In this document: positions 1-14,970 of the stretch, piece after piece
How the letters are laid out: each line of letters opens with the position of its first letter
Position numbering within the stretch: the first letter of the stretch is position 1
Sequence record: PV112478.1
Length of the DNA stretch: 64,000 bases
Direction: 5' to 3' (one strand)
Position numbers and translations under genes: made by a program
Notes under the pieces: generated by a model
Database searches by the model: none
What the model was told of the DNA's origin: nothing
What the model saw: only the letters and a program-made list of their open reading frames with translations

Positions 1-417
1 CAGCGGAACAGTGAAGGTTTGCTCTCCACCATTACTCAGTCCACCGTTATAAACCCACTGAACAATCGCACCCTTATCCTTCAGAGCTTTATTCAACAGC
101 GCGTAAGTACCGTAGGTGACTTGTTCGCTATTAGCATTCAACAACGGAGTTGCGCCGCCGGCACTATTAACCCAACCTTGAACATGTTCTTTAGTATCGT
201 CAGTGTAAACAAAGAACACATCACCGGGAACCGTTGCCGAAACACCCGCCACAGTACTCAAGTAGGCGTTCTCAAACATGATACTTTCACGTAACGCACG
301 GAGCGTTGTTTTATACGTGTCATTTTCTTCTTTAACTTGAGCAATGGGAATAAACCCATTCTCAGAGGCTACCGACAAAGCCGGTAATTCGGTAATCTTT
401 AAGCTAGACTTATCCAT
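1..417 (-). CDS. Tailspike/hub protein, N-terminal part (runs off the window edge; not in ORF track)
   Basis: Manual translation from ATG at 417: MDKSSLKITELPALSVASENGFIPIAQVKEENDTYKTTLRALRESIMFENAYLSTVAGVSATVPGDVFFVYTDDTKEHVQGWVN...WVYNGGLSNGGEQTFTVPL. The frame is open to base 1 and has the same anchor module as the neighbouring tailspikes. Confidence 0.9.
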   Translation of the reverse strand, partial: MDKSSLKITELPALSVASENGFIPIAQVKEENDTYKTTLRALRESIMFENAYLSTVAGVSATVPGDVFFVYTDDTKEHVQGWVNSAGGATPLLNANSEQVTYGTYALLNKALKDKGAIVQWVYNGGLSNGGEQTFTVPL

Positions 418-476: not shown

Positions 477-500
477 GAGTAGGGCCGATCGGCCCTACTC
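477..500. terminator. Perfect 24-bp palindrome, intrinsic terminator-like hairpin
   Basis: GAGTAGGGCCGATCGGCCCTACTC is self-complementary, intergenic and followed by a T-rich tract on the - strand. Confidence 0.75.
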
Positions 501-524: not shown

Positions 525-719
525 TCAACTACCGGAATCGTCTTCGCTAGTCCTGTCTTCTAAAAGAAAAGAACCATCCAGACCCTTTTCCGATAAGAAC
601 CCAAGTGCGGCTTCCTGATAGTTTTCTACTTCTTCAAAGAAAACGATAGCCTCCCCCAAATCAATTCTGGAAAGAAAATAAACGTTCTCTCGCACAGTAT
701 CCTTGTAGATATAAATCAT
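525..719 (-). CDS. Small acidic protein translationally coupled to a tailspike (possible assembly chaperone)
   Basis: TGATG stop/start overlap with the 719..2704 gene; 64 aa MIYIYKDTVRENVYFLSRIDLGEAIVFFEE... Confidence 0.6.
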   Translation of the reverse strand: MIYIYKDTVRENVYFLSRIDLGEAIVFFEEVENYQEAALGFLSEKGLDGSFLLEDRTSEDDSGS

Positions 720-2704
720 CACAAATACCCTAAAGTCGGATGTTGATCGGAAAACCAAACCGCGGGGAGCTTAACTTGAATAGTACCAACGAAACCAGTA
801 AAGTTAAGTCCAGCGTACCCATACTGGGATGTCCCGGTATCGCAAGACAACATGTAAGTGCCCATGTAATTGTCTGCGGTAAGGGTGATACCTGTTTTTG
901 TCAGCGAGTTTAAAATATCTTGCTGTGGACCTAGGGCATAGCCACTATAGTTTTCACTCATTGACACCACGTTAGTCGTGGCATTATTAGTAAAAGACTG
1001 AGATGAGACTAAACGACATACACCGCGTACGTAAACATTACCGGTAGTTGCGGAGCCAGCTTTGACCGAACAGGATACATGAAATTTCTGTTGGCTATTA
1101 CTGTTATTAATCGGCGTACCCCAGAGAAGGTTAACTGAGTTAGTTGTACTTGTGGCAGTGATTGTCACCGGGATCAAACCGTCAGAGTCTGCATCTGCTG
1201 CAGAACCGTAGACAATGGTTGAGCCGTTAGCAACTACGTACCATTGCCCAATCGCTCTGGCGGTCGGTAAGGCCGCACCCGCGGTACCATTAAATAATAA
1301 CCCGGTACTATTCAAAATGTAACCGTCTGTGGTATCGTAGGATGGCAGAAAACGATAGGTTTGTCCACGTAACGGGTAACGTATTCTGACTTTGATCAGG
1401 TTAGTGGGATCGTACGCCTTATAACTCCCATAAGCACTATTAACATGTGGGCCGTAACAGAAAATGTTTACGTTGTCAAGGTCGATAGCGGTGCGTGTAG
1501 TGGTCGCATAACCGATCGTTCTGACGCCGCGGTAAGGGTCGTTAACAAACGCGTACATGAAGATATTTCCGCCAATCATTTTAAAGTTATTTTCGCCAGC
1601 GCCAGTTGTACGAGATGGGCAGTTGACCAAATAGCGGAAACCTTCAACATGACATTCAATCAATGTATCTTGACCGATGTTCACTGGCGAATAAAAAACA
1701 ACATCATTTGTGTTATAGTCGAAACTACAACCAAAATATTTAAACATGTGGACAGTATCGTTTCGGTAAACCCCACCCAAATAGTTATCACCGATGAGGC
1801 AGTTAACAAAACGCATGTTCTCACCGGAGTTAACGCAGTTTGTACCGGCGTCAGTTACTACACCGTACGCGTTACGATAAAAATCACAATTCTCCACGAT
1901 ATCTAAATACGTATCGGTAGAACCTATCCTAATTCCACCGTAAAATTGCGCGACTTTTACACCCGTGATTTTTACTTCACGGACGTGAACATAACCACCA
2001 GACGGGTATGTTGTATTTCCTAAAGAAATACCGTGGAACGTAGTTTTGTCGTATCCGGGGCCTAAAATGAAAAGTGCGTTAGTGTCCAACACTTCGGTGT
2101 AGCTGGCAGAACTCCCTGCGTTATTAGTGAAGGGGTTTGCTGCGGATCGAGTAAGCCCAGTAAACTCGCCGGTTATTTCTACGCCGTTCCCGGTAGTAAA
2201 GGCACTAAAATCCCAAGTCTGGTTAGTGTCAACAATAACAGAAACAAACGGCGGAATACGCACTGTCGCTGTCATTTTATAAACGGTTTCGCCGGTAGCG
2301 TTATCTAACGGTGGTACACGCAACCGGTAAGTTCCATTTGCGATATAACCCCTGGCAATAACGACTTTGATGATGTCGCTGGTTATTTTATTAATACATT
2401 GCGCTAAATTATTCGCGGAAACCGAAAAACCGGCCATCCAGACGTTAATTGGTTTACTTGTGTCAAGTAGCCAGTTAGCTCCTTTGGTGGTTTTAAATAC
2501 GCTGTAGTCGTTATCTGCGGCCGTTGAACTCGCTCTGTACGTCATTATTTCGTTTACGTCAGGTCCGCCCACAACCGCTCGTTTTAGTAGAACGCGCTGA
2601 CCGTCAAACCAGGGTTCTAAAGACCGTAACTCAGTTACGGACCCCACGGTCAAAAGAGAATATTCCCCATTACTCCCTCGTGGCTTATTAAATTCAGTGA
2701 GCAT
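719..2704 (-). CDS. Tailspike/polysaccharide depolymerase (beta-helix) with a short TSP3-like head
   Basis: Head MLTEFNKPRGS; tailspike neck motif ELRSLEPWFDGQ; beta-helix motifs SGENMRFVNC and GCSFDYN; S/T/N/G-rich. Confidence 0.85.
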   Translation of the reverse strand: MLTEFNKPRGSNGEYSLLTVGSVTELRSLEPWFDGQRVLLKRAVVGGPDVNEIMTYRASSTAADNDYSVFKTTKGANWLLDTSKPINVWMAGFSVSANNLAQCINKITSDIIKVVIARGYIANGTYRLRVPPLDNATGETVYKMTATVRIPPFVSVIVDTNQTWDFSAFTTGNGVEITGEFTGLTRSAANPFTNNAGSSASYTEVLDTNALFILGPGYDKTTFHGISLGNTTYPSGGYVHVREVKITGVKVAQFYGGIRIGSTDTYLDIVENCDFYRNAYGVVTDAGTNCVNSGENMRFVNCLIGDNYLGGVYRNDTVHMFKYFGCSFDYNTNDVVFYSPVNIGQDTLIECHVEGFRYLVNCPSRTTGAGENNFKMIGGNIFMYAFVNDPYRGVRTIGYATTTRTAIDLDNVNIFCYGPHVNSAYGSYKAYDPTNLIKVRIRYPLRGQTYRFLPSYDTTDGYILNSTGLLFNGTAGAALPTARAIGQWYVVANGSTIVYGSAADADSDGLIPVTITATSTTNSVNLLWGTPINNSNSQQKFHVSCSVKAGSATTGNVYVRGVCRLVSSQSFTNNATTNVVSMSENYSGYALGPQQDILNSLTKTGITLTADNYMGTYMLSCDTGTSQYGYAGLNFTGFVGTIQVKLPAVWFSDQHPTLGYL

Positions 2705-2733
2705 TGTAACACCTCAAAATTGAAAGACTAAGT

Positions 2734-2737
2734 CATA
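2734..2737 (-). promoter_or_regulatory. Late-promoter-like TATG(AC)
   Basis: TTTTCTATGACT lies 4 nt after the hairpin, upstream of RBS GAGGTG and the ATG at 2704. Confidence 0.55.
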
Positions 2738-2741
2738 GAAA

Positions 2742-2772
2742 AATCAGAGGAGACGCATAGTCTCCTCTGATT
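2742..2772. terminator. Intrinsic terminator-like hairpin
   Basis: AATCAGAGGAGAC-GCATA-GTCTCCTCTGATT, 13-bp stem. Confidence 0.8.
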
Positions 2773-2778
2773 AATTTA

Positions 2779-5046
2779 CTACTCGTTAATAAACCAATGG
2801 ACGGGCGCTTTAACGTAGATAGTTCCTACTAACCCGGTGAAATTGATAGATACCGCTATTTGATCAGAATACGCAGCCTTCCTCACTGACATTGGGAATG
2901 CAATATAACCCACATCAGTTAAACCGGTTAATGCTTTCTTCTTATTAAAGTGAGCGTCTACTCCGACAGAGGTTCCCTGAGTATTCGCGATTTGAGATCG
3001 ACTTTCCGTGATAGTAGCGACGCTACCTGATACAGTACCGGAGTACGTTGGCGTGTCGTAGTATTTAATGTAGTTATAAAGATAAAGTCCGGGTGTATAG
3101 TCACTCCCTAATCTTACCGAAATTGCAGATGCAAAAAGTGGATTAAAGATATTCGCAGAATCGAATTTTTTCAAACATTCGAGAGTAATGATATTACTTG
3201 CTAAAGTGGAAGTGATTTTAATAGTCGCAAGGCCGTCTTCGTCCAAGGCGGCGAGTTTAGTGATAGTTACCCCTGTTCCCGTAAAACTAAACTTATGTTG
3301 AGTTCGAGTATCGGTTTGGTTGTTGAAATCAGTATCCGTTGCCACTGTATCCCATTTCCAGCGCCACCCCATCAAAGATTGTTGATAATCACTCAAAACA
3401 GGAGTAGTGGCGCGAAGGGAACCGGATGGTGCTAATGTATTGTATCCGCCCTTAACAACGCAAACAAACTGGTCCCCGGTATTATCTCCGTAACCAGCAA
3501 CGGTTCCCTGGCCTGTGAGGGAGTAATAAGGAGCCCAATAGTAATCCGATAAAGACCATGCGCACTCGTTGAATGTTACCCCAAGATCTTTTGTCGGACA
3601 AGAAATCATTTGGCGTGCGTGGTTCGCTCTAAAAGTGTCAGAGTAATAAGGAGAGGTGTACTGGTTAGGGTACATGTAGACGCCATTAAACATGAAAATG
3701 TTTCTAATATTCCATGTGTTACCCGGATAGATCTGCGTAAGCTGTGGCTGGTTTACCAACATATTACCAAAGCCTTCGATCCAACCTCTTTCCATCGTGA
3801 CACGTGTATTAGACGAATAAAGTGCACACCTAAAAACGTCCCCTGCTGTGTAATCCAAACTCGTGTCAATGATACTAACGATCGCGCCCTTATCAAACCA
3901 GAAATGAGCTGTGTCGTTATTCCCAATAACCCCGTTAATGAATACTACCTTTTCACCAGAGTTAACAATTGTTTGGTTAGTTTCGAACCACACTCCGATT
4001 TGGTTATTTGCAATATTGAAATCAGAAAAAGTATTGCAATAAAAGTTAATGTAGTTGATACGCAGACCGTACTTAAATCCTTCCACCCTGAAATTCTTGA
4101 CATTAAGATCCCTGACAGACATCGGGAGCGTTCCATAGGTGGCAATTCTAATACCCGCGGCGTTACTTGTTGACTTTCCTGGGCCTAAAATAAAGAAAGA
4201 CCCGCCATTAGCGTTAAAGAAATTCGACCCCTGAGTATCGACGAAATTACTATCCGGCATCTGGCCGGCTGCAACACCAGTGATACCTTCATTCGTGATA
4301 ACGATCGCGTCATCGTTTGTTAGAGAAGTAACTAAATAAATATTCCCATAAGAGACTAAAGAAAAGAACGAGGGGATTTTAACTTGTTTCTCTAGCACGT
4401 ATTTATCAGAAAACTGAGGAAAGAAAATCTGAGTGCTAACACCGAAAGTATTCTTGTTAGCAGAAACTTTGGCGGTAGTAAAATCAACAATTTTTTGGAT
4501 TGCGGCTCCTGTACCCGTACCGTCGCTTTTCACTCCGGCCAAACGAATATCTACCCCTTTAGAGACATCAACTTTCCAACGAGCACCTTTGGGAGTCACC
4601 ATAATTGAGAAGTCATTATCAGCGGAAGCAACGTCGCTAGAATCATAATTGGCAATAATATTGATTAGCGGACCGCCTTGTACAGCACGCTCTAAAATAA
4701 TTTTTTGTCCTGCGTACCACGGCTCAAATTTTCGCAGATCGGCGATAGTCGCGACAGATACTGTTGTCAGTGTAGATGGAAACGCCAGAACAGTAAAAGA
4801 ACCTGCGTTCGTAGTTACCGTGGCTGTGGTTCCGGTAACAGAAACGCCACTCACAACTCCGGTGATAGCGGTAGTATTAAAAATCTCTTTTGATTCTGGA
4901 AGAATAGCAAAAGAGTAATTTGTCAGGTCGTTACCGACTTCCAGTGAACCGATAGACGTTTGCGGGATGTTCAATAACTGAGAAAGAACCTCGCCGCTTG
5001 ATTGTACGGATGTACTTCCACCCGGCTGAATAAAATTAGTTTGCAT
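2779..5046 (-). CDS. Tailspike/polysaccharide depolymerase with a Kuttervirus TSP3-like head
   Basis: N-terminus MQTNFIQPGGSTS...GNDLTNY...TNAGS; neck DLRKFEPWYAGQ; beta-helix SGEKVVFING; C-terminus paralogous to 719..2704 (NFTGLVGTIYVKAP). Confidence 0.85.
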   Translation of the reverse strand: MQTNFIQPGGSTSVQSSGEVLSQLLNIPQTSIGSLEVGNDLTNYSFAILPESKEIFNTTAITGVVSGVSVTGTTATVTTNAGSFTVLAFPSTLTTVSVATIADLRKFEPWYAGQKIILERAVQGGPLINIIANYDSSDVASADNDFSIMVTPKGARWKVDVSKGVDIRLAGVKSDGTGTGAAIQKIVDFTTAKVSANKNTFGVSTQIFFPQFSDKYVLEKQVKIPSFFSLVSYGNIYLVTSLTNDDAIVITNEGITGVAAGQMPDSNFVDTQGSNFFNANGGSFFILGPGKSTSNAAGIRIATYGTLPMSVRDLNVKNFRVEGFKYGLRINYINFYCNTFSDFNIANNQIGVWFETNQTIVNSGEKVVFINGVIGNNDTAHFWFDKGAIVSIIDTSLDYTAGDVFRCALYSSNTRVTMERGWIEGFGNMLVNQPQLTQIYPGNTWNIRNIFMFNGVYMYPNQYTSPYYSDTFRANHARQMISCPTKDLGVTFNECAWSLSDYYWAPYYSLTGQGTVAGYGDNTGDQFVCVVKGGYNTLAPSGSLRATTPVLSDYQQSLMGWRWKWDTVATDTDFNNQTDTRTQHKFSFTGTGVTITKLAALDEDGLATIKITSTLASNIITLECLKKFDSANIFNPLFASAISVRLGSDYTPGLYLYNYIKYYDTPTYSGTVSGSVATITESRSQIANTQGTSVGVDAHFNKKKALTGLTDVGYIAFPMSVRKAAYSDQIAVSINFTGLVGTIYVKAPVHWFINE

Positions 5047-5060
5047 TTATTTTTCCTTTA

Positions 5061-5079
5061 AGGAGGGGAACCCCCTCCT
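5061..5079. terminator. Hairpin between tailspike genes
   Basis: AGGAGGGG-AAC-CCCCTCCT. Confidence 0.55.
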
Positions 5080-5083
5080 CCTT

Positions 5084-7840
5084 TTACTCTGTCTCAAAAC
5101 GGAATAGTGACAATCTAGATATGTTTACCGTACCTGTAATGTCAGAAAAAGTCGCTGCAACACGAGCAAACGCTGCGCCAACAGGTGCCCTTATTTTCAC
5201 CGGACTAGAAGCGATGAATCGTGTTGTACCGGCGGAGTAATTTGGTAGGGTAGTGTCGGAAAATACACTTCCCATCGCGGTGTTGTTACCGATTACTTGG
5301 CCACCAGATAATAATACTTTTTGATCATTGTAAAAATAAACGTATGGGGTAATACGGTTATTCCCCGTCGAGTTCAGTAGCTGCATTGCGGCAACAACCC
5401 CGAACGTATCTCCTGCTTTACAGGCAAAATACTCTGTTCCAACTAAAGTCACGTTACTCGCAGAACTTGTACCCGTTAAAGCAAGAACTTTACCTGTAAC
5501 ATCTGTTCTGTCGGCAATTACCCCTGTCATACCCGCGATGTATCCGACAGAAAATTTCGCTAACGTAGAGGAAGTACTCGTAACAGTTGTCCCAGTAGTT
5601 TCCGCACTGAAATCAAAACCGCTATTAATAATAGCGGCCGCGGACGGGACGTTAGGGTAGGGATCTTTCACATACCCACTAACCGCCACGGGTTTACCGG
5701 AAGAGTGTAAATAGAGATCTTCGGTATATGGTTTGACTTCGTGTTTGATCTCAGAGCCATTCCAATGCACTGCAACCTGGTTTCCGTTAAAGAGTGGTCG
5801 AGACGGGCTGTTGGCCAGTCCTAGTGTAGAGTCTGTTTTCTGACCAGAACGCAAACGAGGAAGGAAGTCGCAATTGGTAAAATAGACCGCACAGTTAGAC
5901 GGCGAGCCAACTACATCTAATACGTACCCATTCCAAGCTTCGGCGTGACAGTCAGTAAACTTAACTGCGTTATAACCAGACGATCCCGTAATGACTAATA
6001 TACTACCGTTAGTAAAGTCAAAGCTGCAGTTCATGAAAGAAACATCAAAACCAGGTGCTGCAAGATATACGTGATGTTCGTTGGTACCGCCAAATGTACA
6101 GTTAGTAAACGACATTCGTTCGCCGGAGTTACTGGACGTTGTAGACGGAACATTCAAACTGATACCGTTTTGTTCGAAACGACATTTAGTCGCTGAGAAT
6201 AGATAAGTATCAACGGAAGAAAACGTCAGTGCACGATAGCATTCGGTCACAACAACATTACGGAAAGAAACGTTTCTGGCGTTGGACATACTAGCTGCTT
6301 CGTTACCGATAAATATCCCAGAAAGAGTAGTTATAGCACGACCTTGCCCATCCAGTCGCAATACACCGCCATCAGCCGAAAGGTTCTCACCCTCCCAAAG
6401 ATTGACATTCGTTAAGGTGTCAGTATTTTGGAACTTGATCAGGTACGACCCTGTAAAGTTAGACGATGCAACAATGTTAACGTTACCTTTCGCAACGATA
6501 CTGATTGATGTCGGTGCGACAATTGTTGCAGATATCAGATAACTCCCGGCTGAAATGTTGATCGAAGGGCGACTGTAGAAATTAGTCCCTATTGTTAATT
6601 TCTGGACATATGCGATCGCACGTTGTAAAGGTACCGTGATATCTGTCCCTGGTTGAGCACCCCAAAATGCAACATTAATTTCTGAATTGGGGATAACACG
6701 TTCCCAATAGAAATTCCCACCAACAATGACTGTACCATAGTCTTCCGTCGCACCCCCGCCAATATGACCAATAAATTCCCCGCCGCCAATTTTAGTACCA
6801 GCTGCGTAAGATTTTACTTTAATACGTTCTCCCTCAAACCCCGGTTGACGGGACCGCAGTGAATCCACCGATTCCACGCCGTAAACCCCTTGAACGACTT
6901 GCTCTAAACTCACACCATAACTGGTATTGACCTTTGTCGCGCCCGTCGTTTGTCCCAGTGTCAAAAGAATTTCTGCTGGCGTTCCCGATACCTGTGCGGT
7001 GATGACCGACCGAGAGCCACCCAGTAAGACTTCAACAATGTCGTTAGTATTCAGCGCTTTCGAAAGGTTAATCTTCAATCCGGTGCTATCAACTTCATAG
7101 TGCTTATTCAGGACTTGTTTTGAGCCGTTGATGTAAATAGCAGGGATTGTTTTGAATGTCCACGGAGGAGTAAGTGACGTTTCTCCGCCCACCGCCGCGC
7201 CGTCATTATACAGCCACGTTACGTTGACGTAGTCGGTAATGCCAGGTTCTACTGGCGTGATAGGCGAACCCGGGTAAGGTCTCACGTAGAAGACAACGAA
7301 AGCACCCGCCGTTAACGGCCCTTTTAATTTGACTTTATTCGATAACCGATCAAATGTGTAGTTCAACCCCTTGAACTGATGACCACCGTTCAAGAACATC
7401 TCTGAGACATCGAAACAGTCGAAGGGCAATGCGATTTCCGTTTCGCCACCGTTAGCAGAACCGTTGTTATAAAGGTAACTGACGTATGACGTGTAGGAGC
7501 CGAACTTACCGTCCGCCATCATTTTTCCGGTACCGTAGATAACCGGAGTATTGTCCTTATAGACAGCCGTGGCAGAGGCACCGTTGACGTTAATAAACGC
7601 TGCAGCGTAGAATTGGCTATCGTCAGTATAGACGTAAAAGATTTCATCTTTGACAGTAGCCGCAATACCTTCTGCGAGGGTTTCAAAAGCATTTTCAAAG
7701 AGAAGATTTGATCGAAGATTATTTAACGTGGTACGATATGTTTCATTTTCTGCTCCCGCTACTGCCACTGGCAATAGAGCAGATTCTGGAACAATACCCT
7801 TACTCGAAAGTTCGGAAATTTTTCTTGTGTTATTGGCCAT
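5084..7840 (-). CDS. Hub tailspike: anchor module, two XD-like (GGET) branching modules, neck domain and beta-helix depolymerase
   Basis: Likely start MANNTRKISEL at 7840 (RBS GAGG; the ORF track start at 7885 overlaps the TATG motif). FENAF; YNNGSANGGETEIALPF and YNDGAAVGGETSLTPPW; LRSRQPGFEGER..GGGEF..YWERV; SGERMSFTNC. Confidence 0.88.
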   Translation of the reverse strand: MANNTRKISELSSKGIVPESALLPVAVAGAENETYRTTLNNLRSNLLFENAFETLAEGIAATVKDEIFYVYTDDSQFYAAAFINVNGASATAVYKDNTPVIYGTGKMMADGKFGSYTSYVSYLYNNGSANGGETEIALPFDCFDVSEMFLNGGHQFKGLNYTFDRLSNKVKLKGPLTAGAFVVFYVRPYPGSPITPVEPGITDYVNVTWLYNDGAAVGGETSLTPPWTFKTIPAIYINGSKQVLNKHYEVDSTGLKINLSKALNTNDIVEVLLGGSRSVITAQVSGTPAEILLTLGQTTGATKVNTSYGVSLEQVVQGVYGVESVDSLRSRQPGFEGERIKVKSYAAGTKIGGGEFIGHIGGGATEDYGTVIVGGNFYWERVIPNSEINVAFWGAQPGTDITVPLQRAIAYVQKLTIGTNFYSRPSINISAGSYLISATIVAPTSISIVAKGNVNIVASSNFTGSYLIKFQNTDTLTNVNLWEGENLSADGGVLRLDGQGRAITTLSGIFIGNEAASMSNARNVSFRNVVVTECYRALTFSSVDTYLFSATKCRFEQNGISLNVPSTTSSNSGERMSFTNCTFGGTNEHHVYLAAPGFDVSFMNCSFDFTNGSILVITGSSGYNAVKFTDCHAEAWNGYVLDVVGSPSNCAVYFTNCDFLPRLRSGQKTDSTLGLANSPSRPLFNGNQVAVHWNGSEIKHEVKPYTEDLYLHSSGKPVAVSGYVKDPYPNVPSAAAIINSGFDFSAETTGTTVTSTSSTLAKFSVGYIAGMTGVIADRTDVTGKVLALTGTSSASNVTLVGTEYFACKAGDTFGVVAAMQLLNSTGNNRITPYVYFYNDQKVLLSGGQVIGNNTAMGSVFSDTTLPNYSAGTTRFIASSPVKIRAPVGAAFARVAATFSDITGTVNISRLSLFRFETE

Positions 7841-7882
7841 TGCAAGAAACCTCATTGTCGGCAATAGGGCTGTAAAAATAGT

Positions 7883-7886
7883 CATA
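7883..7886 (-). promoter_or_regulatory. Late-promoter-like TATG(AC)
   Basis: TTTGTTTTCCTATGAC lies 10 nt after hairpin 7897-7924. Confidence 0.55.
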
Positions 7887-7896
7887 GGAAAACAAA

Positions 7897-7924
7897 TAGA
7901 GAGGAGCCAAAAGGCTCCTCTCTA
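7897..7924. terminator. Intrinsic terminator-like hairpin
   Basis: TAGAGAGGAGCC-AAAA-GGCTCCTCTCTA, 12-bp stem. Confidence 0.8.
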
Positions 7925-7933: not shown

Positions 7934-9901
7934 TTATTGAAGGAATGCTTTGACAGGGCCCAAGTAAACGGAACCTGATGTTTGATAATGACGAAGACCC
8001 ACGTGAACAGTCGCTGCCCCAGGCGGAACAATTACCGATCCGGAGCATTTTACAACATTAGATGCACTACCTGTCGTCCCTGAAAGATTCGTCCCAATTA
8101 CGTTATGGGTAATTTCTACACCTTCAATGTCGTAAAATGTATAACCGAAATAACAACCGCCATTTGTGGAAACAATATTTTCCCAATAGAGCGTGGTAGC
8201 TAAATAAAGAGTTTGTCCTGGCGAGCAGCGTAAACGTTGGCCAAATAACGTTGTCAATCCCCCAGTCGTTGTTGTGCTAAGCACTTTCGCAGAGGCGCCA
8301 ATTGATTTTGAGTTATCGTAAGTTATCGTAGGTTGGAAAGCGGTACCCGTTGCTGAATATATCGTAGACCAACCTGTCAAATCTGCGGTATTATAATTAT
8401 AATTTCTCAGCGGGTTCGTATAATCGCCGATATTTACCATGTCATTATTTCCGTAGATATCAAAATAATTATCGACAACTTTGACGAGGGCACCGCTACC
8501 TGTACATTTAACAACATCAACGGCCGCCATCTTATTGTATTTTCCAGCAGGACATCCCACTAGTCGGAAAATACAAGGACCTGATAAAGTGAACCATACA
8601 GGTTTACCTGCGGTTGTTCCTTGGTTCGCATACGTGGTGGCAACGTCATTTCCGCCGTCAATAAACGTGTTTTGGATATTGACAAACGGTTTTCTTTTTG
8701 AAGAGGTATAAAGCATCTTACCGTACGGGTTAGAGGAATTGTTCTCGAAATGACACCCTATGAAATTAATATTTCCCGTAGAGATATCAAACACAAGATC
8801 ACTATAGTCAAAAGAGTGCGAATAAAAATACGCATCAAGATACTGACCGGTACTGGGAACGTAGACACCCGCAGCGTTCCCGTTAGCGTTTAATCCATTA
8901 TACGTTACGCCACCGAAGATTGAAATGTTTTCCCCTGCGTCGTTGACGCAATTGAAATGCCAGCCATATCGCCAGAACTTACCCACAACCGGCTGTATAA
9001 ATTGCAGAAGGTACGTCGACTGCGAGCCGATATAAATGTTGTCACGAAATCCTTCCACCCACACTTTAGCTAACACCGTGGACACTTGGGTGTTTGTACC
9101 ATCGGGGAAGAACCCAATACCATCTAATGTCCCTACAGGTGTTATAGGTGGTTTCGAAACGGAAGGTCCTCCGTAAGGGCCTTGTAAACGAATTTCCAGC
9201 TCTGATCCTAAATTGTAAGTGGCGCCAGGGACACCTACGACCCGAACAGCATACCCGGTAGTCATTAATGAACCATCTACCACAAACCTTGAACGGTCCA
9301 TGATCAATTTTCCGGAAGCTGCGTAGACAGTAATTTGAGAAGTGATTCGGTAACGAGCATTCGATTCTTTAGAACGAACAGTATAACCTAACTTCAGTAA
9401 TTCTAAGGTTTTTTGTACTGCAACAGTATCATCCGTTATACCGTCTCCCTTCGCCCCATTACTTTCAAAGGTCGTTTGGCCAGAAATGTCATTCAGGGAA
9501 CCAGCACCCATGGGAATAATGCTCATACCGGTACTTTCTGTAACTGATGCTGCAGCTCTCATTTGTCTGCTCGTCGGTAACCTGACTTGTTCATTGTCAT
9601 AACCCAGAATAGGATTAGCTACTCCGTCATTATTTTGGTATTGCAACACCCACAGCTTCGCTGCGCTTTCGTACACGAAAAATACGTCCCCTGACGTTGT
9701 TCCGTTCAGGCCCGCATCCACAGACAGGAAAGCATTCTCGAAACCCAGCGTTTGACGAAGGTCGTTAATTTTGGTGGATTTAGTGAAGGGAACTCCTGCA
9801 CTGGTTTTGGCGTTAATCGGAACGACGTCATTCTCTTTGATGACACCTGCGTCACCGAGTTCAGAAATTTTGATTCCGATAGAATCTGAAGTCTTAGGCA
9901 T
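7934..9901 (-). CDS. Tailspike/depolymerase with anchor module
   Basis: KISELG...DLRQTLGFENAF; pectate-lyase-like entry motif GAKGDGITDDTVAVQ; AGENISIF and SFDYS. Confidence 0.88.
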   Translation of the reverse strand: MPKTSDSIGIKISELGDAGVIKENDVVPINAKTSAGVPFTKSTKINDLRQTLGFENAFLSVDAGLNGTTSGDVFFVYESAAKLWVLQYQNNDGVANPILGYDNEQVRLPTSRQMRAAASVTESTGMSIIPMGAGSLNDISGQTTFESNGAKGDGITDDTVAVQKTLELLKLGYTVRSKESNARYRITSQITVYAASGKLIMDRSRFVVDGSLMTTGYAVRVVGVPGATYNLGSELEIRLQGPYGGPSVSKPPITPVGTLDGIGFFPDGTNTQVSTVLAKVWVEGFRDNIYIGSQSTYLLQFIQPVVGKFWRYGWHFNCVNDAGENISIFGGVTYNGLNANGNAAGVYVPSTGQYLDAYFYSHSFDYSDLVFDISTGNINFIGCHFENNSSNPYGKMLYTSSKRKPFVNIQNTFIDGGNDVATTYANQGTTAGKPVWFTLSGPCIFRLVGCPAGKYNKMAAVDVVKCTGSGALVKVVDNYFDIYGNNDMVNIGDYTNPLRNYNYNTADLTGWSTIYSATGTAFQPTITYDNSKSIGASAKVLSTTTTGGLTTLFGQRLRCSPGQTLYLATTLYWENIVSTNGGCYFGYTFYDIEGVEITHNVIGTNLSGTTGSASNVVKCSGSVIVPPGAATVHVGLRHYQTSGSVYLGPVKAFLQ

Positions 9902-9976: not shown

Positions 9977-12190
9977 TTACCAACTAGAAAGAGCAGCTCT
10001 TACCCAAGTATTTGTTGCGATACAGACGTAGTAATAACTACTATCAGCCGCCCATTGTCCTACAGTACCGGGAGCTGTTGCATTAGCAGGTACTGCGACT
10101 TTAACGCCAACTGGATTCCCTGCCACGGTTATGGCTCTTGAAAAATAACCATCCCGCCACTGAAGAGCACTTGTCCCAAAATCATAAAGGTTCGTCGCAT
10201 TAGGGACTACTGTCCCCATGAAGTTGAACTGACTGGCGCCTCCGTTAGCAACAAAATTCATACCGGATAAATAACTGGTTATTGTCATCGGTCCGGTGTT
10301 ACCAAGTAAGATTCTACCCCCTAAAGTCGTGTTACCGTAAGGATAAAAATCCAGTCTCCTGTCTCCACTTGTAGTGTTATTATTTCCTATTTGGAGAATA
10401 TTACCACTGGAGATAGAGGCTGTTGTTTTAATAAGGTAACCGCTTATCGTCCCATCCTGAGCCACCGAAAGAATAGGTGTTGTCGGGTTGAAAGCACCAT
10501 CTGTATTGGTGTAATAAATAGAAAGGGCGCTGTTATTATCGCTATCCACATCGATAATAAATTTTCTCGTCGCTACTTTGACGTCGTTAATGATCAGGCC
10601 GCTAGTAATTCTTCTCGTAAAGTTATTGATGGCGCAGTTTATCAGCTGATAAGCTCTTTTACCTTGTGTACTAGCGCTGACGTCAAAGATAGGGGCTACT
10701 GTAGAGTTACCGGAAACTTCAGAGAATGCGCTGGAGAAATAACAGCTATCGAAAACACGCCCGGTATTAGTACTTGTACCAAATCTAATCATTGGTACGT
10801 GGACAGCGCTGTCATAACCAACTGCGGACTTTCTTAAAGTTTGGAAAGTACATCCAGTGAATTTAATAATCCCTTGGTTGATGAATCCTAATTCGTAAGT
10901 GCCCGCTGAATCTGTTCCGCCAGAACCATTATCGGTAAAAATTACTGTATCGAAATTAAACTGCGTACCGCCGCCCAAATTAAACCATTTTGCACCGTAG
11001 AAGTGAGTCTCAATATGACCGCCTTCAAATTTAATGTTGTGGTGCGTACTGGAGGTAGGAGTTGGGTCTACTTTAATAGCTACGTAGTTTTTAGTGTACG
11101 TCGTTTCAATGTGCGGTCTGATGAACACAATGTTGTTGGAGTTGTCCGTGGCCTGAGGTAAGAAATGAATCCCCGTAGCAGGATTATTTGTATCATTATC
11201 ATCAACGGCAACAAACCCAGTCATGTAGATACAGTCGAAAACCGCATCGTAACACTGACCGAATGTTAAAGCTTTAGTGGGCGACATGAAGTTAAGGTTT
11301 GAAAATCTTCCACCGACAGCCATTGAGTTAGCGGTCACTTCACTTCCGAGTTTAATGTAATAAGCAAAAATACCCGGCTCTTTAATAAAAGTTAACCCGT
11401 CCATTTCAAGACGGCCGCCCGTGAAAGTAAAGAGAAAATCTTTATTCACGTTAGAAGAAATATAAGCGCCTTTTCCTAGAATCCTAAACCTTGGTTTTCC
11501 AGTCTCATAAGTGATGGCACTTAGGTCTTTAACTATTTTACTGTCGAGTCGATATTTACCTGGCGGGAAGAATAACCACCCCGAGGCATACCGTTGAGCG
11601 TTAGAGATATTGATTTCTTTTTGATAAATACATTTATCTATTGCTGCGCTAACCGCCGGAGACCAATCCCAAGTAGAGGGGTCATTAGGATTATCTTTTT
11701 TGGTGACTAGACTTGAAAACTCCCAAATATTGATAGGTAGGCTATTTAATGCTTTAGCCGCGCTCTCCGCGCTTAACTCGATCTCTTTACGTTGATAGCC
11801 AACTTCATCAGCCCCATTATTAGACATAATTCCATCAACGTCACCACGAATTACTTTTATACCGTAACCGGTATAATTAATTTTAGCAGTACCGTCCGAG
11901 TTAAAAATCTGTTCTGCAACTCCGTTGCGGTTGACATATGCTTTAACTGTCGTTTTTTCTGCGTCGGCATAAACGTAGAAAATTTGATTAGGAACAGTAC
12001 CCGCAAGACCCGCTACTGTCGTAGTGAATGCGTTTTCGAAATTTAGCAGGGAGCGTAAATCAGAAATCTCCATCGCTTTAGATTCGGTTATTCCCGCTTC
12101 ATTCTGAGCGATAAATACGACATCAGAATCATTTACCGGTTTCGATGGTCGATCCATTTCACTGAGTTTTACAAAGATCTCACTGGCCAT
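9977..12190 (-). CDS. Tailspike/depolymerase with anchor module
   Basis: KLSEM...DLRSLLNFENAF; NIWEF..DPSTWDWSPAVSAAI and LFFPPGKY tailspike entry motifs; beta-helix body; C-terminal VPANATAPG..GQ..YYYVCIATNTWVR. Confidence 0.88.
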   Translation of the reverse strand: MASEIFVKLSEMDRPSKPVNDSDVVFIAQNEAGITESKAMEISDLRSLLNFENAFTTTVAGLAGTVPNQIFYVYADAEKTTVKAYVNRNGVAEQIFNSDGTAKINYTGYGIKVIRGDVDGIMSNNGADEVGYQRKEIELSAESAAKALNSLPINIWEFSSLVTKKDNPNDPSTWDWSPAVSAAIDKCIYQKEINISNAQRYASGWLFFPPGKYRLDSKIVKDLSAITYETGKPRFRILGKGAYISSNVNKDFLFTFTGGRLEMDGLTFIKEPGIFAYYIKLGSEVTANSMAVGGRFSNLNFMSPTKALTFGQCYDAVFDCIYMTGFVAVDDNDTNNPATGIHFLPQATDNSNNIVFIRPHIETTYTKNYVAIKVDPTPTSSTHHNIKFEGGHIETHFYGAKWFNLGGGTQFNFDTVIFTDNGSGGTDSAGTYELGFINQGIIKFTGCTFQTLRKSAVGYDSAVHVPMIRFGTSTNTGRVFDSCYFSSAFSEVSGNSTVAPIFDVSASTQGKRAYQLINCAINNFTRRITSGLIINDVKVATRKFIIDVDSDNNSALSIYYTNTDGAFNPTTPILSVAQDGTISGYLIKTTASISSGNILQIGNNNTTSGDRRLDFYPYGNTTLGGRILLGNTGPMTITSYLSGMNFVANGGASQFNFMGTVVPNATNLYDFGTSALQWRDGYFSRAITVAGNPVGVKVAVPANATAPGTVGQWAADSSYYYVCIATNTWVRAALSSW

Positions 12191-12351: not shown

Positions 12352-14910
12352 ATGTCCGATATTTTTTCTCAAAAGATCTCTGAGTTACAGTCCAGTACAG
12401 GGCCGAGCGAAAACGCTTATTTCCCTCTCTCTGAAGCCAATAGCGACTTCTCAGAAAAAGTGAGTGTCGCCACCTTAAGGGAAACTATTGGTTTTGAGAA
12501 TGCTTTCCCTACCGTCGCTATTGCGTTACTGGCGACTAAAGAAAGTGACGTCTTCTTCGTCTATGAAAACGAAAAGAAAGAAAACGTTTTGGGTTATGTC
12601 AATCAGGGTAATGGAAATTATTCCGCTTTGATGACCGATAGTAACGTGCAACTGCGCTACGCTACGAGTAGTTTCATTGTTAATAGCTTATTCTTTTTGC
12701 GTGGGGCGGAAAGTTTCGAAGAGCTTAGAACAATTAAACCGTGGTACGAAGGACAACGCATTAAACTTAAAAGCTACTACGTTGACGGTTTAACAGGTGG
12801 CGGTGAGTTTGTTGCGCGGTTGACTGTTGGTGTAGATGACAGTGGTGTCATCGCAGCAGGGTCGGGATTCTATTGGGAACGTGTACTCACCGATCCGGTG
12901 ATCTATCCTGAATATTTTGGCGCCGATACCTCGTTATCTGATAATAGTACGGCACTTAGCACCACCTTTAATTACGCCATCGCCAATAAAAAATCGGTCT
13001 GCATTAAAGCGAACATCAAAGTTTCTACGGTAACCATCGCTGGATTTAATTTCACTATTTTTGGGCCGGGGACAATGACCTTCTCTGACCCAAATGGACT
13101 TGTTATCAGTAACGGAAACGCCGGTATTATCGACGGGCCTGCTCTCGTTTTTTCCGGGGTAGGTTCAACTGGAATTACCGTAACGGGCTCTAACAATGTC
13201 GTGGTTCGAAACTGTACTATTTCGAATCATGGTCGAAATGGTGGGGTCTACATTTTAAACTCCAGCAATGTGATGGTCTCCAAGAATACTTTCCTGAACG
13301 CAGCGGGTGATGCGACGTTTGGATCCTCTACCACCGCTGATGTCAATATCTGGGGGACGAATAACGGTTGTTCCGTGGTAGATAACCGGTTTATCTCTGG
13401 AGGTGGCTACGCTATTCAGATTCGTTCGCACGCGTTAGGGGATGTTTCAGTTAATCACGTCATCTCAAGAAACTTCATTGACGGTTACAACAGTTACGGA
13501 ATTAACTGCTACCGAAATAAACAATCGTTGACGGATACGCAGGTATTGAAAAATGTTATTGTTTCTGAAAACGTTATCAGTAACATTTCAGGTAATCGTC
13601 CAAGTAACCCAGCTACTCCCGATGTGTTAATCTTCGGTACTGGCATCTACATGCAAGGCTCCGAAATGTCAACGGTTGTCAATAACACAATCACTAATGT
13701 GTGTACCAACTCTAACAATGACTTGCTGGCGCCTGCCGGAATTGGGGTCACCAACATCGGTAATATTAATATCGCCAACAACACCATTGTCAACTCGGGG
13801 ATGTACGGTATTAAAATCAACGACTCTGTCGGTTTAGGCGATGTTTACGGGCGAGTGATTGTTGAGAGTAATATTATTGACACAGTCGGTACCGATGGCA
13901 TCATGGTCCAGGATCGCAATAACATTTCAGTAACCAACAACTCCATTAAAGGCGCTGCTCGTGACGGAATTAAAATCAATACTTCTCCGTCAAGTCAAAC
14001 CAAAGTAGTTTCCACCGATAAAAAGATTTCCTTTAACAGCCTCAAAACCATCACGGGGATCGGAATCTATATCGAATATTCTCAAAGCTGGTCTATTGAA
14101 AGTAACTGTGTTACCGATTGTGCTCAGGGGTTAGTTTTCCAGTACAGTGCGCACGGTAGAGTGATAGGTAATACTATCGTTAATGCCTCTACGCGGGGCT
14201 ACTACGCACATGTGACAAACACCACACCGGGATCAATCATTTTTACTGAAAATAAATGCTTGAATACCGTCACGCAAATTGCTGTCGAACATCCGATTGA
14301 CTACTACAACAACCCGCAATTGACACCGACGGGGACGTACGCTAATGCGAGAGAAATTACAGCGGATTTACCAGATGTTACGGGTTGCGAAGTCCTGAAT
14401 TTAAAACCCACCGCAGCGATGAATCTGACTGGATTTGCAGGCGGGAAAATTGGGCAGCGCATTACCATATGGGTAAATAATGCATTGGTAACAATGGTAC
14501 AGAGTGGCTCCTTTATTCTAGCTGGGTTGAAAAATAGAAACCCGGGCTATAACAGCGCTGTAACGTTTGTGAAAACAAAAGCAGGGTGGGTCGAAGTAGC
14601 ACAAAGTGGGTACGCAGTCGCTTACATTAACCCAACGTCTGGGAGTTCCGTTACTGTCAGTGACTATACTGGAGGAATCTACATCCAAGGTAGTAGTGCA
14701 CTAGCTAGTCTTTCGGTTACGTTACCTGCTTCCCCCGTGGACGATCAAGTCTGTACTATTTGTTCTCAGAGTGGCGTTACGGCATTGACATTGACGGCAA
14801 ATACGGGACAAAGTATTTTCCCTCCGACCACACCGACTGCCCTTTCTGCGGGCATTTCTATTCAGTATCGGTATCGGGCGGCGGCTAACGGCTGGTTCCG
14901 CTATCAGTGA
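12352..14910 (+). CDS. Tailspike/depolymerase with anchor module, neck domain and right-handed beta-helix
   Basis: KISELQ...TLRETIGFENAF; ELRTIKPWYEGQ..GGGEF..YWERV; many N/I/G beta-helix repeats (NVIVSENVISN, NTIVNSGMYGI); C-terminal TLPASPVDDQ domain. Confidence 0.88.
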   Translation: MSDIFSQKISELQSSTGPSENAYFPLSEANSDFSEKVSVATLRETIGFENAFPTVAIALLATKESDVFFVYENEKKENVLGYVNQGNGNYSALMTDSNVQLRYATSSFIVNSLFFLRGAESFEELRTIKPWYEGQRIKLKSYYVDGLTGGGEFVARLTVGVDDSGVIAAGSGFYWERVLTDPVIYPEYFGADTSLSDNSTALSTTFNYAIANKKSVCIKANIKVSTVTIAGFNFTIFGPGTMTFSDPNGLVISNGNAGIIDGPALVFSGVGSTGITVTGSNNVVVRNCTISNHGRNGGVYILNSSNVMVSKNTFLNAAGDATFGSSTTADVNIWGTNNGCSVVDNRFISGGGYAIQIRSHALGDVSVNHVISRNFIDGYNSYGINCYRNKQSLTDTQVLKNVIVSENVISNISGNRPSNPATPDVLIFGTGIYMQGSEMSTVVNNTITNVCTNSNNDLLAPAGIGVTNIGNINIANNTIVNSGMYGIKINDSVGLGDVYGRVIVESNIIDTVGTDGIMVQDRNNISVTNNSIKGAARDGIKINTSPSSQTKVVSTDKKISFNSLKTITGIGIYIEYSQSWSIESNCVTDCAQGLVFQYSAHGRVIGNTIVNASTRGYYAHVTNTTPGSIIFTENKCLNTVTQIAVEHPIDYYNNPQLTPTGTYANAREITADLPDVTGCEVLNLKPTAAMNLTGFAGGKIGQRITIWVNNALVTMVQSGSFILAGLKNRNPGYNSAVTFVKTKAGWVEVAQSGYAVAYINPTSGSSVTVSDYTGGIYIQGSSALASLSVTLPASPVDDQVCTICSQSGVTALTLTANTGQSIFPPTTPTALSAGISIQYRYRAAANGWFRYQ

Positions 14911-14936
14911 ATCAAAAGACTAAGATAATATAATAC

Positions 14937-14966
14937 AATCGAAGGAGGCTAACTCCTCCTTCGATT
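14937..14966 (+). terminator. Intrinsic terminator-like hairpin
   Basis: AATCGAAGGAGG-CTAACT-CCTCCTTCGATT followed by TTT. Confidence 0.8.
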
Positions 14967-14970
14967 TTTA

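What the first reader, a model, noticed from the sequence alone, without database searches (positions are those of the whole stretch)
719..7840. Hierarchical branched tailspike module: one hub with two XD-like docks followed by two TSP3-headed spikes
Seen: 5084..7840 has, between its anchor module and neck, two tandem modules of about 70 aa: YNNGSANGGETEIALPF..LNGG..YTFD..KVKLKGPLTAGAFVV (about 7280-7490) and YNDGAAVGGETSLTPPW..INGS..YEVD..KINLSKALNTNDIVE (about 7020-7225). The next two genes downstream lack the anchor and start MQTNFIQPGGSTS and MLTEFNKPRGS. Recalled knowledge: in Kuttervirus CBA120 and phage G7C, GGET-containing gp10-like XD domains are branch points, and TSP3 begins MISQFNQPRGSTS and docks on them. 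Inference: an Ackermannviridae-style branched complex is grafted onto a nucleus-forming jumbo phage through a different anchor, with two docks for two dependent spikes.
Basis: partly seen in the sequence, partly recalled or inferred. Interest (0 to 1): 0.85.

Follow-up and report, generated by a model that had tools for sequence, protein, structure and literature searches.

The report
Branched tailspike hub in Klebsiella jumbo phage
This is the branched tailspike cluster of a ϕKp24-like Klebsiella jumbo phage: one spike carries two small docking modules, and the next two spikes carry the matching N-terminal plug. The design is already known from other phages and was outlined in print for the sister phage ϕKp24.

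Summary
The window is 100% identical to Klebsiella phage LPKP23, a sister of ϕKp24 (genus Maaswegvirus, family Chimalliviridae).

- **Hub.** Gene 5084..7840(-) encodes a lineage-specific N-terminal anchor, two tandem ~78-aa modules, a neck and a beta-helix enzyme.
- **Modules.** They are 32% identical to each other. They are homologous to the XD2/XD3 (T4 gp10-like) branching domains of B2 gp49, Moo19 gp82, CBA120 TSP2/TSP4 and KP32-type fibres.
- **Spike 2779..5046.** It has the docking peptide plus a D1 head. A profile of this clade's heads hits CBA120 TSP3 and TSP1, G7C gp63.1 and B2 gp48.
- **Spike 719..2704.** It keeps only the ~12-aa docking peptide, as KP32 RBP2 does.
- **Census.** The scanned ~98% of LPKP23 holds three XD modules and exactly three docking-peptide spikes. 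Eight proteins carry the anchor.
- **Relatives.** All ten relatives show the two-XD hub with its two spike classes. The eight that reach the one-XD hub show it with a third class. Only the docking parts are conserved; the enzymes are swapped.
- **Graft.** Serratia phage Moabite has eight anchored spikes and no XD module or head in its cluster, so the branch looks like an add-on.

Docking itself is inferred, not shown. Ouyang et al. 2022 already predicted gp10-like docks in ϕKp24 gp306 and gp301.

The parts
5084..7840 (-). Hub A tailspike (918 aa): anchor, XD-a, linker, XD-b, neck and beta-helix enzyme. Orthologue of ϕKp24 gp306.
   Evidence: ORF. The annotated CDS of PV112478.1 is. Residues 1-330 are 66-97% identical among relatives, and residues 331-918 only 24-27%.
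7505..7840 (-). Lineage-specific N-terminal anchor domain of hub A (about residues 1-112).
   Evidence: It aligns with the N-termini of five other window spikes, with 14 invariant columns. It matches phrog_27731, of unknown function. There are 131 clusters among 1.84 billion proteins, nearly all with the match at the N-terminus. The AF2 model has pLDDT 77.9 and no PDB fold match. It is unrelated to the head profile.
7256..7489 (-). XD-a, the first gp10-like branching module (residues 118-195).
   Evidence: HMM domain. Aligned to CBA120 TSP4 XD3 and to B2 gp49 module 1. AF2 pLDDT is 73-90.
6995..7228 (-). XD-b, the second gp10-like branching module (residues 205-282). A Pro-rich linker precedes it at 7229..7255.
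   Evidence: HMM domain. Aligned to B2 gp49 module 2 and to KP32-type fibre 7xy1. Przondovirus tblastn hits fall on this module.
5087..6994 (-). Neck (predicted helix at residues 288-297) and beta-helix depolymerase body of hub A.
   Evidence: Pfam Beta_helix at residues 525-672. PDB hits to Klebsiella K2 tailspikes and to the CBA120 TSP2 body. Helix from the AF2 model.
2779..5046 (-). Class 1 dependent spike (755 aa), orthologue of ϕKp24 gp304. It has no anchor and no XD module.
   Evidence: The catalytic part is swapped among relatives (8-32% identity in most) while residues 1-15 stay 80-100% identical.
4762..5046 (-). Docking peptide (residues 1-12, window 5011..5046) plus TSP1/TSP3-type D1 head (to about residue 95) of the class 1 spike.
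   Evidence: Head profile A3 against PDB: CBA120 TSP3 at 1.2e-9, TSP1 at 5.8e-8, G7C gp63.1 at 9e-8, B2 gp48 at 1.6e-7. hhalign against the FEC14 TSP3-like protein gives 97.7% probability. BLASTP E values are 3e-5 and 5e-6.
719..2704 (-). Class 2 dependent spike (661 aa), orthologue of ϕKp24 gp303. The docking peptide runs straight into the beta-helix module, with no D1 head.
   Evidence: Only residues 1-12 are conserved among relatives (67-92%), and the rest is 6-28% identical in most.
2669..2704 (-). 12-residue N-terminal docking peptide of the class 2 spike.
   Evidence: It has the same motif as KP32-192 RBP2. That conserved peptide is required for RBP2 incorporation in KP32 (PMC13352976). 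The motif is also shared with the FEC14 TSP3-like and TSP1-like proteins.
525..719 (-). Small acidic 64-aa ORF that overlaps the stop of the class 2 spike. Function unknown.
   Evidence: Annotated in PV112478.1. Conserved in ϕKp24 as MOC16_gp111. No PHROG hit.
1..417 (-). N-terminal 139 residues of hub B (1304 aa, mostly outside the window; orthologue of ϕKp24 gp301). This stretch holds the anchor and the start of hub B's single XD module.
   Evidence: Hub B is followed by one class 3 spike that has the peptide plus a D1 head.
7934..9901 (-). Independently anchored tailspike (655 aa).
   Evidence: Anchor alignment. No XD module.
9977..12190 (-). Independently anchored tailspike (737 aa).
12352..14910 (+). 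Independently anchored tailspike (852 aa), with beta-helix and NosD-like repeats.
15000..16922 (+). Independently anchored tailspike (640 aa).
7897..7924 (-). Terminator-like hairpin just upstream of hub A. Similar hairpins lie at 2742..2772 and 477..500.
   Evidence: Consensus scan. ϕKp24 has annotated terminators at the equivalent places.

Best explanation
The region encodes one sub-assembly of the multi-enzyme adsorption apparatus of a ϕKp24-like Klebsiella jumbo phage.

**Proposed mechanism**
- Hub A is a trimeric depolymerase tailspike. Its roughly 112-residue N-terminal anchor, specific to this lineage, fixes it to the virion. Seven other proteins in the genome carry the same anchor.
- Between anchor and neck, hub A carries two beta-jellyroll modules of the T4 gp10 XD2/XD3 type. 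Each module is expected to trimerise on its own axis and present a docking face.
- The two downstream spikes have no anchor. They are held on the virion only through their N-termini.
- The class 1 spike (2779..5046) has a conserved peptide plus a TSP1/TSP3-type D1 head. By analogy with gp63.1 on gp66 XD3 and TSP1 on TSP4 XD3, it most likely sits on the C-proximal module XD-b.
- The class 2 spike (719..2704) has the 12-residue peptide alone, as in KP32 RBP2. It most likely sits on XD-a.
- One hub would then display three different capsule-degrading enzymes. A second hub with one XD module would carry one further spike.

**Shown:** the homology of the modules, the head and the peptide; the modular conservation pattern; the counts.

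**Inferred:** physical docking, which spike sits on which module, and where the anchor binds.
For: - **XD homology by sequence.** E 1e-28 to B2 gp49 and Moo19 gp82, 4e-11 to CBA120 TSP4-N, plus TSP2 and the KP32-type fibre.
- **XD homology by fold.** TSP4-N at E 3.5e-8. Chain 9d84_B of the B2 gp48:gp49 complex at TM 0.94 and rmsd 0.9 A. T4 gp10 weakly, at 1.5e-2.
- **Head homology.** A profile built only from this clade's heads retrieves CBA120 TSP3, TSP1, G7C gp63.1 and B2 gp48 at E 1e-9 to 2e-7. hhalign gives 97.7% probability.
- **Peptide motif.** It is shared with the TSP3-like and TSP1-like proteins of Kuttervirus FEC14, with G7C-type gp63.1 and with KP32 RBP2. In KP32 the peptide is experimentally required for attachment to the branching domain (PMC13352976).
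- **Census of LPKP23.** The genome was scanned in pieces, about 98% of it. It holds three XD modules, exactly three docking-peptide ORFs and eight anchors.
- **Ten related genomes and contigs.** All ten show a hub with 2 XD modules plus class 1 and class 2 spikes. The eight that extend to the hub with 1 XD module show it with class 3.
- **Selective conservation.** Hub residues 1-330 are 66-97% identical against 24-27% for the enzyme part. Spike residues 1-12 or 1-15 are 67-100% identical against 6-32% for most of the enzyme parts.
- **Hub N-terminus across catalytic bodies.** The first 300 residues are 91-97% identical in twelve hubs of 800-952 aa.
- **Moabite.** Eight anchored spikes, no XD module and no head in the cluster.
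- **Prior art.** An HHpred prediction for ϕKp24 gp306 and gp301 is published (PMC9700779).
Against: - No interaction was tested here, and no multimer prediction was available.
- Two XD modules do not always mean two partners. G7C gp66 has XD2 and XD3 but one partner, which needs only XD3 (PMC8825819). The G7C-like contig L014 shows 2 XD modules and one spike.
- Phage MJ359 has two class 3 spikes behind a hub with one XD module. The one-dock-one-spike rule is therefore not strict.
- The class 2 peptide is too short for a statistical test on its own.
- Pfam Tail_spike_N did not reach threshold on the 2779 product.
- The assignment of class 1 to XD-b and class 2 to XD-a is by analogy only. Hub B's single module is about equally similar to both, at 31-32% identity.
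- About 7 kb of the LPKP23 genome (97-104 kb) was not scanned.
Confidence: 0.62

Rival explanations
1. Only one of the two modules is a working dock: the C-proximal, XD3-like one, as in G7C. It holds the D1-headed class 1 spike. The other module is a spacer or stabiliser. The peptide-only class 2 protein attaches elsewhere or acts as a free, non-virion depolymerase.
For: In G7C, gp63.1 binding needs gp66 XD3 but not XD2, and the role of XD2 is unknown (PMC8825819). The G7C-like contig L014 has 2 XD modules and one spike. The class 2 spike lacks the D1 head.
Against: LPKP23 has 3 XD modules and 3 docking-peptide proteins. The 12-residue class 2 peptide is the only conserved part of that protein across nine orthologues, which argues that it is under selection as an attachment element. 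A peptide-only RBP2 does dock on a branching domain in KP32 (PMC13352976). The hub with one XD module goes with one peptide class.
Confidence: 0.2
2. This is the published ϕKp24 model. The gp306 orthologue is the single primary fibre. Most other spikes, including those called 'anchored' here, hang from its gp10-like region in successive layers.
For: Ouyang et al. 2022 proposed it from N-terminal lengths and HHpred (PMC9700779). Tomograms show a dense branched fibre mass.
Against: The hub has only two XD modules. The other spikes carry the same N-terminal anchor as the hub itself, so they should bind whatever the hub binds. Moabite has eight such spikes and no XD module in its cluster. The anchor profile is unrelated to the docking head profile, with hhalign probability 0.2%.
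Confidence: 0.07
3. The XD modules mainly join hubs to each other, by XD-XD contacts like CBA120 TSP2 XD2 with TSP4. Hub B would then sit on hub A.
For: In CBA120 the TSP2-TSP4 association was proposed to run through their XD2 domains, and TSP3 binding needs the preformed TSP4:TSP2 complex (PMC8825819).
Against: Both hubs have their own full anchor, so neither needs the other to reach the virion. The number of modules matches the number of anchorless spikes.
Confidence: 0.06

Closest known systems
Klebsiella phage ϕKp24 (vB_KpM_FBKp24) gp306 / gp304 / gp303, the 'hyperbranched tail fibres' of Ouyang et al. 2022
   Same: The genes are orthologous and in the same order. The class 1 and class 2 spikes are 96-100% identical throughout. 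Hub residues 1-285 are 94% identical, falling to 87% over the neck (residues 286-330). T4gp10-like docking domains were already predicted in gp306 and gp301.
   Different: The hub's enzyme body is replaced, at 27% identity. There is no 97-aa ORF between the hub and the class 1 spike. Hub B has 1304 aa against 915 aa. The published model lumps anchored and peptide-docked spikes into one group and makes gp306 the sole primary fibre. The data here point to many parallel anchored spikes and only three docked ones.
G7C gp66 / gp63.1 and Shigella phage B2 gp49 / gp48 (N4-like Schitoviridae)
   Same: These are the closest sequence relatives of the XD pair: about 40% identity across both modules, E 1e-28. 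The partner carries an N-terminal peptide plus a D1 head that is homologous to the class 1 head. The Foldseek match to chain B of the solved gp48:gp49 complex 9d84 has TM 0.94.
   Different: They are podophages with a different anchor. They have one partner for two modules, and only XD3 is needed in G7C.
CBA120 / Kuttervirus TSP1-4 complex (Ackermannviridae)
   Same: XD2/XD3-type modules occur in TSP2 and TSP4. TSP1 and TSP3 start with the same peptide motif and D1 head. TSP4 XD3 binds TSP1.
   Different: TSP4 has the AD triple beta-helix anchor and an XD1 domain, neither of which is found here. TSP2 rides on TSP4, making a three-layer system. Here the two hubs are parallel and each has its own anchor.
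[quoted passage not shown]
   Same: The branching domain is homologous to XD-b. RBP2 begins with the same peptide motif and goes straight into its enzyme, like the 719 product. The peptide has been shown to be needed for attachment.
   Different: The anchor is a T7-like fibre anchor. The phage is a podophage with a single secondary spike.
T4 gp10 domains D2/D3
   Same: The prototype trimeric beta-jellyroll platforms, which bind the gp12 and gp11 trimers. There is a weak Foldseek match to 5iv5 at E 1.5e-2.
   Different: gp10 is a baseplate wedge protein with no enzyme body. Sequence similarity is not detectable directly.

Membership tests
T4 gp10-like XD2/XD3 branching domain | A beta-jellyroll module of roughly 70-80 residues, homologous to XD2/XD3 of CBA120 TSP4/TSP2, G7C gp66 and T4 gp10 | tested here: met
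   phmmer against PDB gives E 1e-28 to 4e-11. Foldseek gives 7rej at 3.5e-8 and 9d84_B at TM 0.94. The two modules match each other at E 3e-11.
T4 gp10-like XD2/XD3 branching domain | Placed directly after the N-terminal anchor and before the neck and enzyme of a primary receptor-binding protein | tested here: met
   Anchor at residues 1-112, XD modules at 118-195 and 205-282, helix at 288-297, beta-helix from about residue 331.
T4 gp10-like XD2/XD3 branching domain | The module trimer binds the N-terminus of a second trimeric protein | not testable with these tools
   Only single-chain prediction was available. Support is indirect, from counts and conservation.
TSP1/TSP3/gp63.1-type N-terminal head (Pfam Tail_spike_N) | An N-terminal docking peptide motif at residue 1 | tested here: met
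   The 2779 and 719 products carry the motif. It is the same motif as in the FEC14 TSP3-like and TSP1-like proteins. Only three ORFs in the scanned part of LPKP23 carry it.
TSP1/TSP3/gp63.1-type N-terminal head (Pfam Tail_spike_N) | A D1 head domain of about 85 residues after the peptide (2779 product) | tested here: met
   The clade profile A3 against PDB gives TSP3 at 1.2e-9, TSP1 at 5.8e-8, gp63.1 at 9e-8 and gp48 at 1.6e-7. hhalign gives 97.7% probability. Pfam's own model gave no hit at E 0.1.
TSP1/TSP3/gp63.1-type N-terminal head (Pfam Tail_spike_N) | A D1 head domain of about 85 residues after the peptide (719 product) | tested here: not met
   The motif that opens the beta-helix module starts at about residue 20. 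There is no head HMM hit. Only residues 1-12 are conserved among orthologues.
KP32-type secondary RBP with conserved peptide | [quoted passage not shown] | tested here: met
   The 719 product compared with the KP32-192 RBP2 N-terminus. Its position in the hub's gene cluster.
Ackermannviridae four-TSP complex | A TSP4-type AD anchor (intertwined triple beta-helix) and an XD1 domain | tested here: not met
   The anchor profile has no PDB sequence hit. The anchor model has no PDB fold hit, best E 0.5. There is no room for an XD1 domain between residues 112 and 118.
Ackermannviridae four-TSP complex | A secondary hub without an anchor (TSP2) that rides on the primary hub | tested here: not met
   Both hubs carry the full anchor.
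Chimalliviridae (nucleus-forming jumbo phages) | Assignment of the clade to the family, and phiKZ-type core genes | tested here: met
   ICTV moved Maaswegvirus and Siatvirus into Chimalliviridae (PMC12451628). The window holds split RNA polymerase beta genes and a phiKZ gp182-like protein. A tubulin-like gene is annotated in LPKP23. Chimallin itself was not searched for.

The most novel reading that the evidence does not exclude
The 'hyperbranched' look of ϕKp24-type phages may come mainly from parallel plugging rather than hierarchy. Six to ten different trimeric spikes per genome share one roughly 112-residue anchor. That anchor has a fold with no solved relative. It is restricted to the Klebsiella Maaswegvirus/Siatvirus clade and the Serratia/Pectobacterium Moabite-like jumbo phages, which implies a still unknown multi-socket receptor on the baseplate. 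The XD-plus-peptide branch (three modules, three spikes) would be a later graft, borrowed from podophage or Ackermannviridae-type receptor-binding modules and found only in the Klebsiella clade. This would revise the published single-primary-fibre model.
Probability: 0.5. Interest if true: 0.5.

Novelty: new member of a known kind. Interest (0 to 1): 0.38.

Why it matters
Klebsiella capsule diversity limits phage host range, and ϕKp24-type phages are the most extreme answer known. ϕKp24 has 14 receptor-binding proteins, and 11 have confirmed depolymerase activity (DepoCatalog preprint).

Knowing which spikes are anchored directly and which hang from which dock gives a concrete parts list. That list can be used to interpret the existing tomograms and to annotate relatives.

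The result also shows that one branching-domain-and-peptide interface is shared by podophages, Ackermannviridae and chimalliviruses. The main attachment domain of this lineage, in contrast, is structurally uncharacterised.

Tried and rejected
- **Single-sequence PDB searches.** The 719 and 2779 products gave nothing. The isolated head gave nothing either. Only a clade profile worked.
- **Pfam.** No family was found for either dependent spike.
- **Anchor against known structures.** There was no hit by sequence profile or by fold. BFVD returned only the same clade.
- **Is the anchor a diverged docking head?** I tested this after a weak BFVD hit to a Tail_spike_N protein and rejected it. hhalign probability was 0.2%.
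- **Which hub A module does hub B's XD resemble?** Inconclusive, at 31-32% identity to both.
- **A full-text search for the PDB codes 9D80-9D84** returned only unrelated papers. The entries were traced through the Moo19/B2 paper instead.
- **The first AF2 model of hub residues 1-300** was poor in the anchor (pLDDT about 50-60). A second model with a deeper alignment was used for the anchor.
- **An early script could not find the comparator loci,** because several loci share one file. This was fixed.
- **Alignment A2 was discarded.** It was built with full-length proteins by mistake.
- **Nucleus formation.** It was not confirmed from the Prichard 2023 text or the 2025 chimallin survey. The question was settled by the ICTV summary. 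Chimallin was not searched for.


Full report
**Identity of the window.** The region 719..7885 is 100% identical to Klebsiella phage LPKP23 (PV112478.1). It is about 91% identical over 75% of its length to ϕKp24 (vB_KpM_FBKp24, genus Maaswegvirus). The deposited LPKP23 annotation calls every gene here 'hypothetical'. From the ϕKp24 annotation and gene order, 5084..7840 is the orthologue of gp306, 2779..5046 of gp304 and 719..2704 of gp303. ICTV has moved Maaswegvirus and Siatvirus into Chimalliviridae (PMC12451628). The window also holds split RNA polymerase beta genes, a 2194-aa phiKZ-type tail protein and a phiKZ gp182-like protein.

**The observation.** The three ORFs exist as described. 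In the 918-aa hub the two modules lie at residues 118-195 and 205-282. They are 32% identical to each other, E 3e-11. The whole hub searched against PDB sequences gives these hits:
- B2 gp49 at E 1.1e-28 and Moo19 gp82 at 3.1e-28, each covering both modules
- CBA120 TSP2 (6w4q), with both of its XD domains aligned
- CBA120 TSP4-N (7rfo/7rej) at 3.7e-11, on XD3
- a KP32-type fibre (7xy1)

A tblastn of the module pair finds 440 phage records. They are Kuttervirus and other Ackermannviridae, G7C-like N4 phages at about 40% identity across both modules, and Przondovirus. An AlphaFold2 model of hub residues 1-300 has pLDDT 73-90 in the modules. Foldseek places it on CBA120 TSP4-N at E 3.5e-8. It also matches the 69-residue chain B of the B2 gp48:gp49 entry 9d84 (TM 0.94, rmsd 0.9 A) and, weakly, T4 gp10.

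**The two dependent spikes.** Neither has the anchor or an XD module. I fetched a Kuttervirus (FEC14) through a tool hit. Its TSP3-like and TSP1-like proteins start with the same motif as the two window proteins: an aromatic or Leu at position 5, Q/K-P at 7-8 and G-S at 10-11. G7C-type gp63.1 has a looser version.

For the 2779 product the likeness runs on through about 85 residues. BLASTP gives E 3e-5 and 5e-6. I built a profile from 15 heads of this phage clade only. In the PDB it retrieves, in order, CBA120 TSP3 (1.2e-9, residues 1-88 on 1-87), TSP1 (5.8e-8), G7C gp63.1 (9e-8), B2 gp48 (1.6e-7) and the TSP4 head (0.026). hhalign against the FEC14 TSP3-like head gives 97.7% probability.

The 719 product is different. 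After about 12 residues it runs into the motif that opens the beta-helix module, so it has no D1 head. This is the layout of KP32 RBP2. In isolate KP32-192 the true N-terminus of RBP2 carries the same peptide motif. That 'conserved peptide' has been shown to be required for RBP2 to attach to the branching domain of RBP1 (PMC13352976).

**Comparative evidence that modules and peptides are a matched docking pair.** I classified every large ORF in the tailspike clusters of ten relatives with HMMs for anchor, XD module and head, plus a peptide pattern. The relatives were ϕKp24, MJ359, KpLz-2_45, KpSz_1, Centimanus and five metagenomic contigs.
- In all of them the hub with two XD modules occurs together with a class 1 spike (start MQTNFIQP) and a class 2 spike (start MLTDFN[KR]P). 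In one contig an anchored spike is inserted between the two.
- A second hub has one XD module and is followed by a class 3 spike (start MLNRLVQP, plus D1 head). This holds in the eight relatives that reach that far.
- Segment identities show which parts are held constant:

| Protein | Conserved part | Swapped part |
|---|---|---|
| Hub A | residues 1-330, 66-97% | enzyme body, 24-27% |
| Class 1 | residues 1-15, 80-100% | enzyme body, 8-32% in most |
| Class 2 | residues 1-12, 67-92% | remainder, 6-28% in most |
| Class 3 | residues 1-12, 75-83% | remainder, 3-22% in most |

- A protein search finds twelve hubs of 800-952 aa whose first 300 residues are 91-97% identical to the window's.
- I scanned LPKP23 piece by piece, about 98% of the genome. 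The 97-104 kb stretch, which holds only small genes, was left out. The scan gives three XD modules, exactly three ORFs with the docking peptide, and eight proteins with the anchor.

**The anchor.** Five spikes in the window, plus hub B whose first 139 residues lie at 1..417, share a roughly 112-residue N-terminal domain with 14 invariant positions.
- It matches only phrog_27731, of unknown function, and no PDB sequence.
- Among 1.84 billion representative proteins it occurs in 131 clusters. In nearly all of them it sits at the very N-terminus, and most full-length members are 570-1347 aa.
- In the phage collection it occurs in 23 records only. These are this Klebsiella clade and the Serratia/Pectobacterium Moabite-like jumbo phages, with 6-10 copies each.
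- An AF2 model (pLDDT 77.9, alpha/beta) has no significant PDB neighbour, best E 0.5. In BFVD it matches only the same clade.
- It is unrelated to the docking head.
- The tailspike cluster of Serratia phage Moabite has eight anchored spikes but no XD module and no head.

So the anchor system is shared by the wider lineage, and the XD/peptide branch is an addition in the Klebsiella clade.

**Most likely mechanism.** Hub A is fixed to the virion by its anchor. Its two XD trimers offer two faces. The class 1 spike (peptide plus D1 head) and the class 2 spike (peptide only) each occupy one face. Hub B carries a class 3 spike in the same way. The other anchored spikes attach independently. The assignment of class 1 to the C-proximal module rests on analogy with gp63.1 on gp66 XD3 and TSP1 on TSP4 XD3 (PMC8825819). 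I could not test it, and hub B's module is equally similar to both hub A modules.

**Caveats.**
- In G7C the XD2 module has no known partner.
- A G7C-like contig shows two modules and one spike.
- MJ359 has two class 3 spikes behind a one-module hub.
- No interaction was measured or modelled.

[quoted passage not shown] Ouyang et al. 2022 already reported long T4gp10-like folds in ϕKp24 gp306 and gp301 as docking sites. That paper grouped gp300, gp303 and gp304 with the anchored spikes and made gp306 the single primary fibre. The present data suggest a flatter design instead: many parallel anchored spikes, two hubs and three docked spikes. This refines a published system and is not a new kind of system.

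**Verdict.** The finding is a new member of a known kind and of moderate interest. The most open question is the uncharacterised anchor and its baseplate socket.

Noticed in passing
window 525..719 (-): A 64-aa acidic ORF whose start overlaps the stop of the class 2 spike. It is conserved in ϕKp24. Relatives with other enzyme bodies carry different small ORFs (49-97 aa) beside their spikes, for example in L006, L008 and ϕKp24 MOC16_gp108. These could be spike-specific assembly factors. There is no PHROG hit.
   Followed up: partly
LPKP23 33903..34526 (outside the window; L017): A 207-aa protein that matches the spike anchor profile (E 1e-11) but has no enzyme body. It is an anchor-only protein.
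   Followed up: no
LPKP23 42633..45317 (outside the window; L017): An eighth anchored spike, encoded about 80 kb away from the main tailspike cluster.
   Followed up: no
L006 19107..20834, L011 11467..13194, L012 13414..15141: A 575-aa protein that follows the class 3 spike in three relatives. It has no anchor, no XD module and no docking peptide. It may be a free enzyme or may attach in some other way.
   Followed up: no
L010 (phage MJ359) 10704..13115 and 13169..14974: Two class 3 spikes with different bodies sit behind a hub that has a single XD module. This is an exception to the one-dock-one-spike count.
   Followed up: partly
window 26145..30632, 30648..32279, 32324..38908, 38954..41098: Split phiKZ-type RNA polymerase beta genes. 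A 2194-aa tail protein with a transglycosylase region. A 714-aa protein homologous to phiKZ gp182 and to a 'tail tube initiator complex protein gp203'.
   Followed up: partly
window 62011..63873 (-): A 620-aa protein with internal repeats. It hits about 19 PHROG tail or virion families in several stretches each, so it is probably a repeat-built fibre.
   Followed up: no
LPKP23 257160..257243 (outside the window; L020): The deposited annotation lists a 'tRNA-Stop(tta)' among a cluster of phage tRNAs, which could be a suppressor-type tRNA.
   Followed up: no
protein P0116: A 950-aa representative protein that matches the anchor profile in five internal stretches (best at residues 222-302), not at the N-terminus.
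   Followed up: no
LPKP23 112894..114963 and 114980..117022 (L002); Moabite L022 27375..31503: Two adjacent proteins of about 685 aa with their own N-termini (orthologues of ϕKp24 gp294 and gp295). They are conserved even in Serratia phage Moabite, unlike the swapped spikes, so they may be fixed baseplate fibres.
   Followed up: partly
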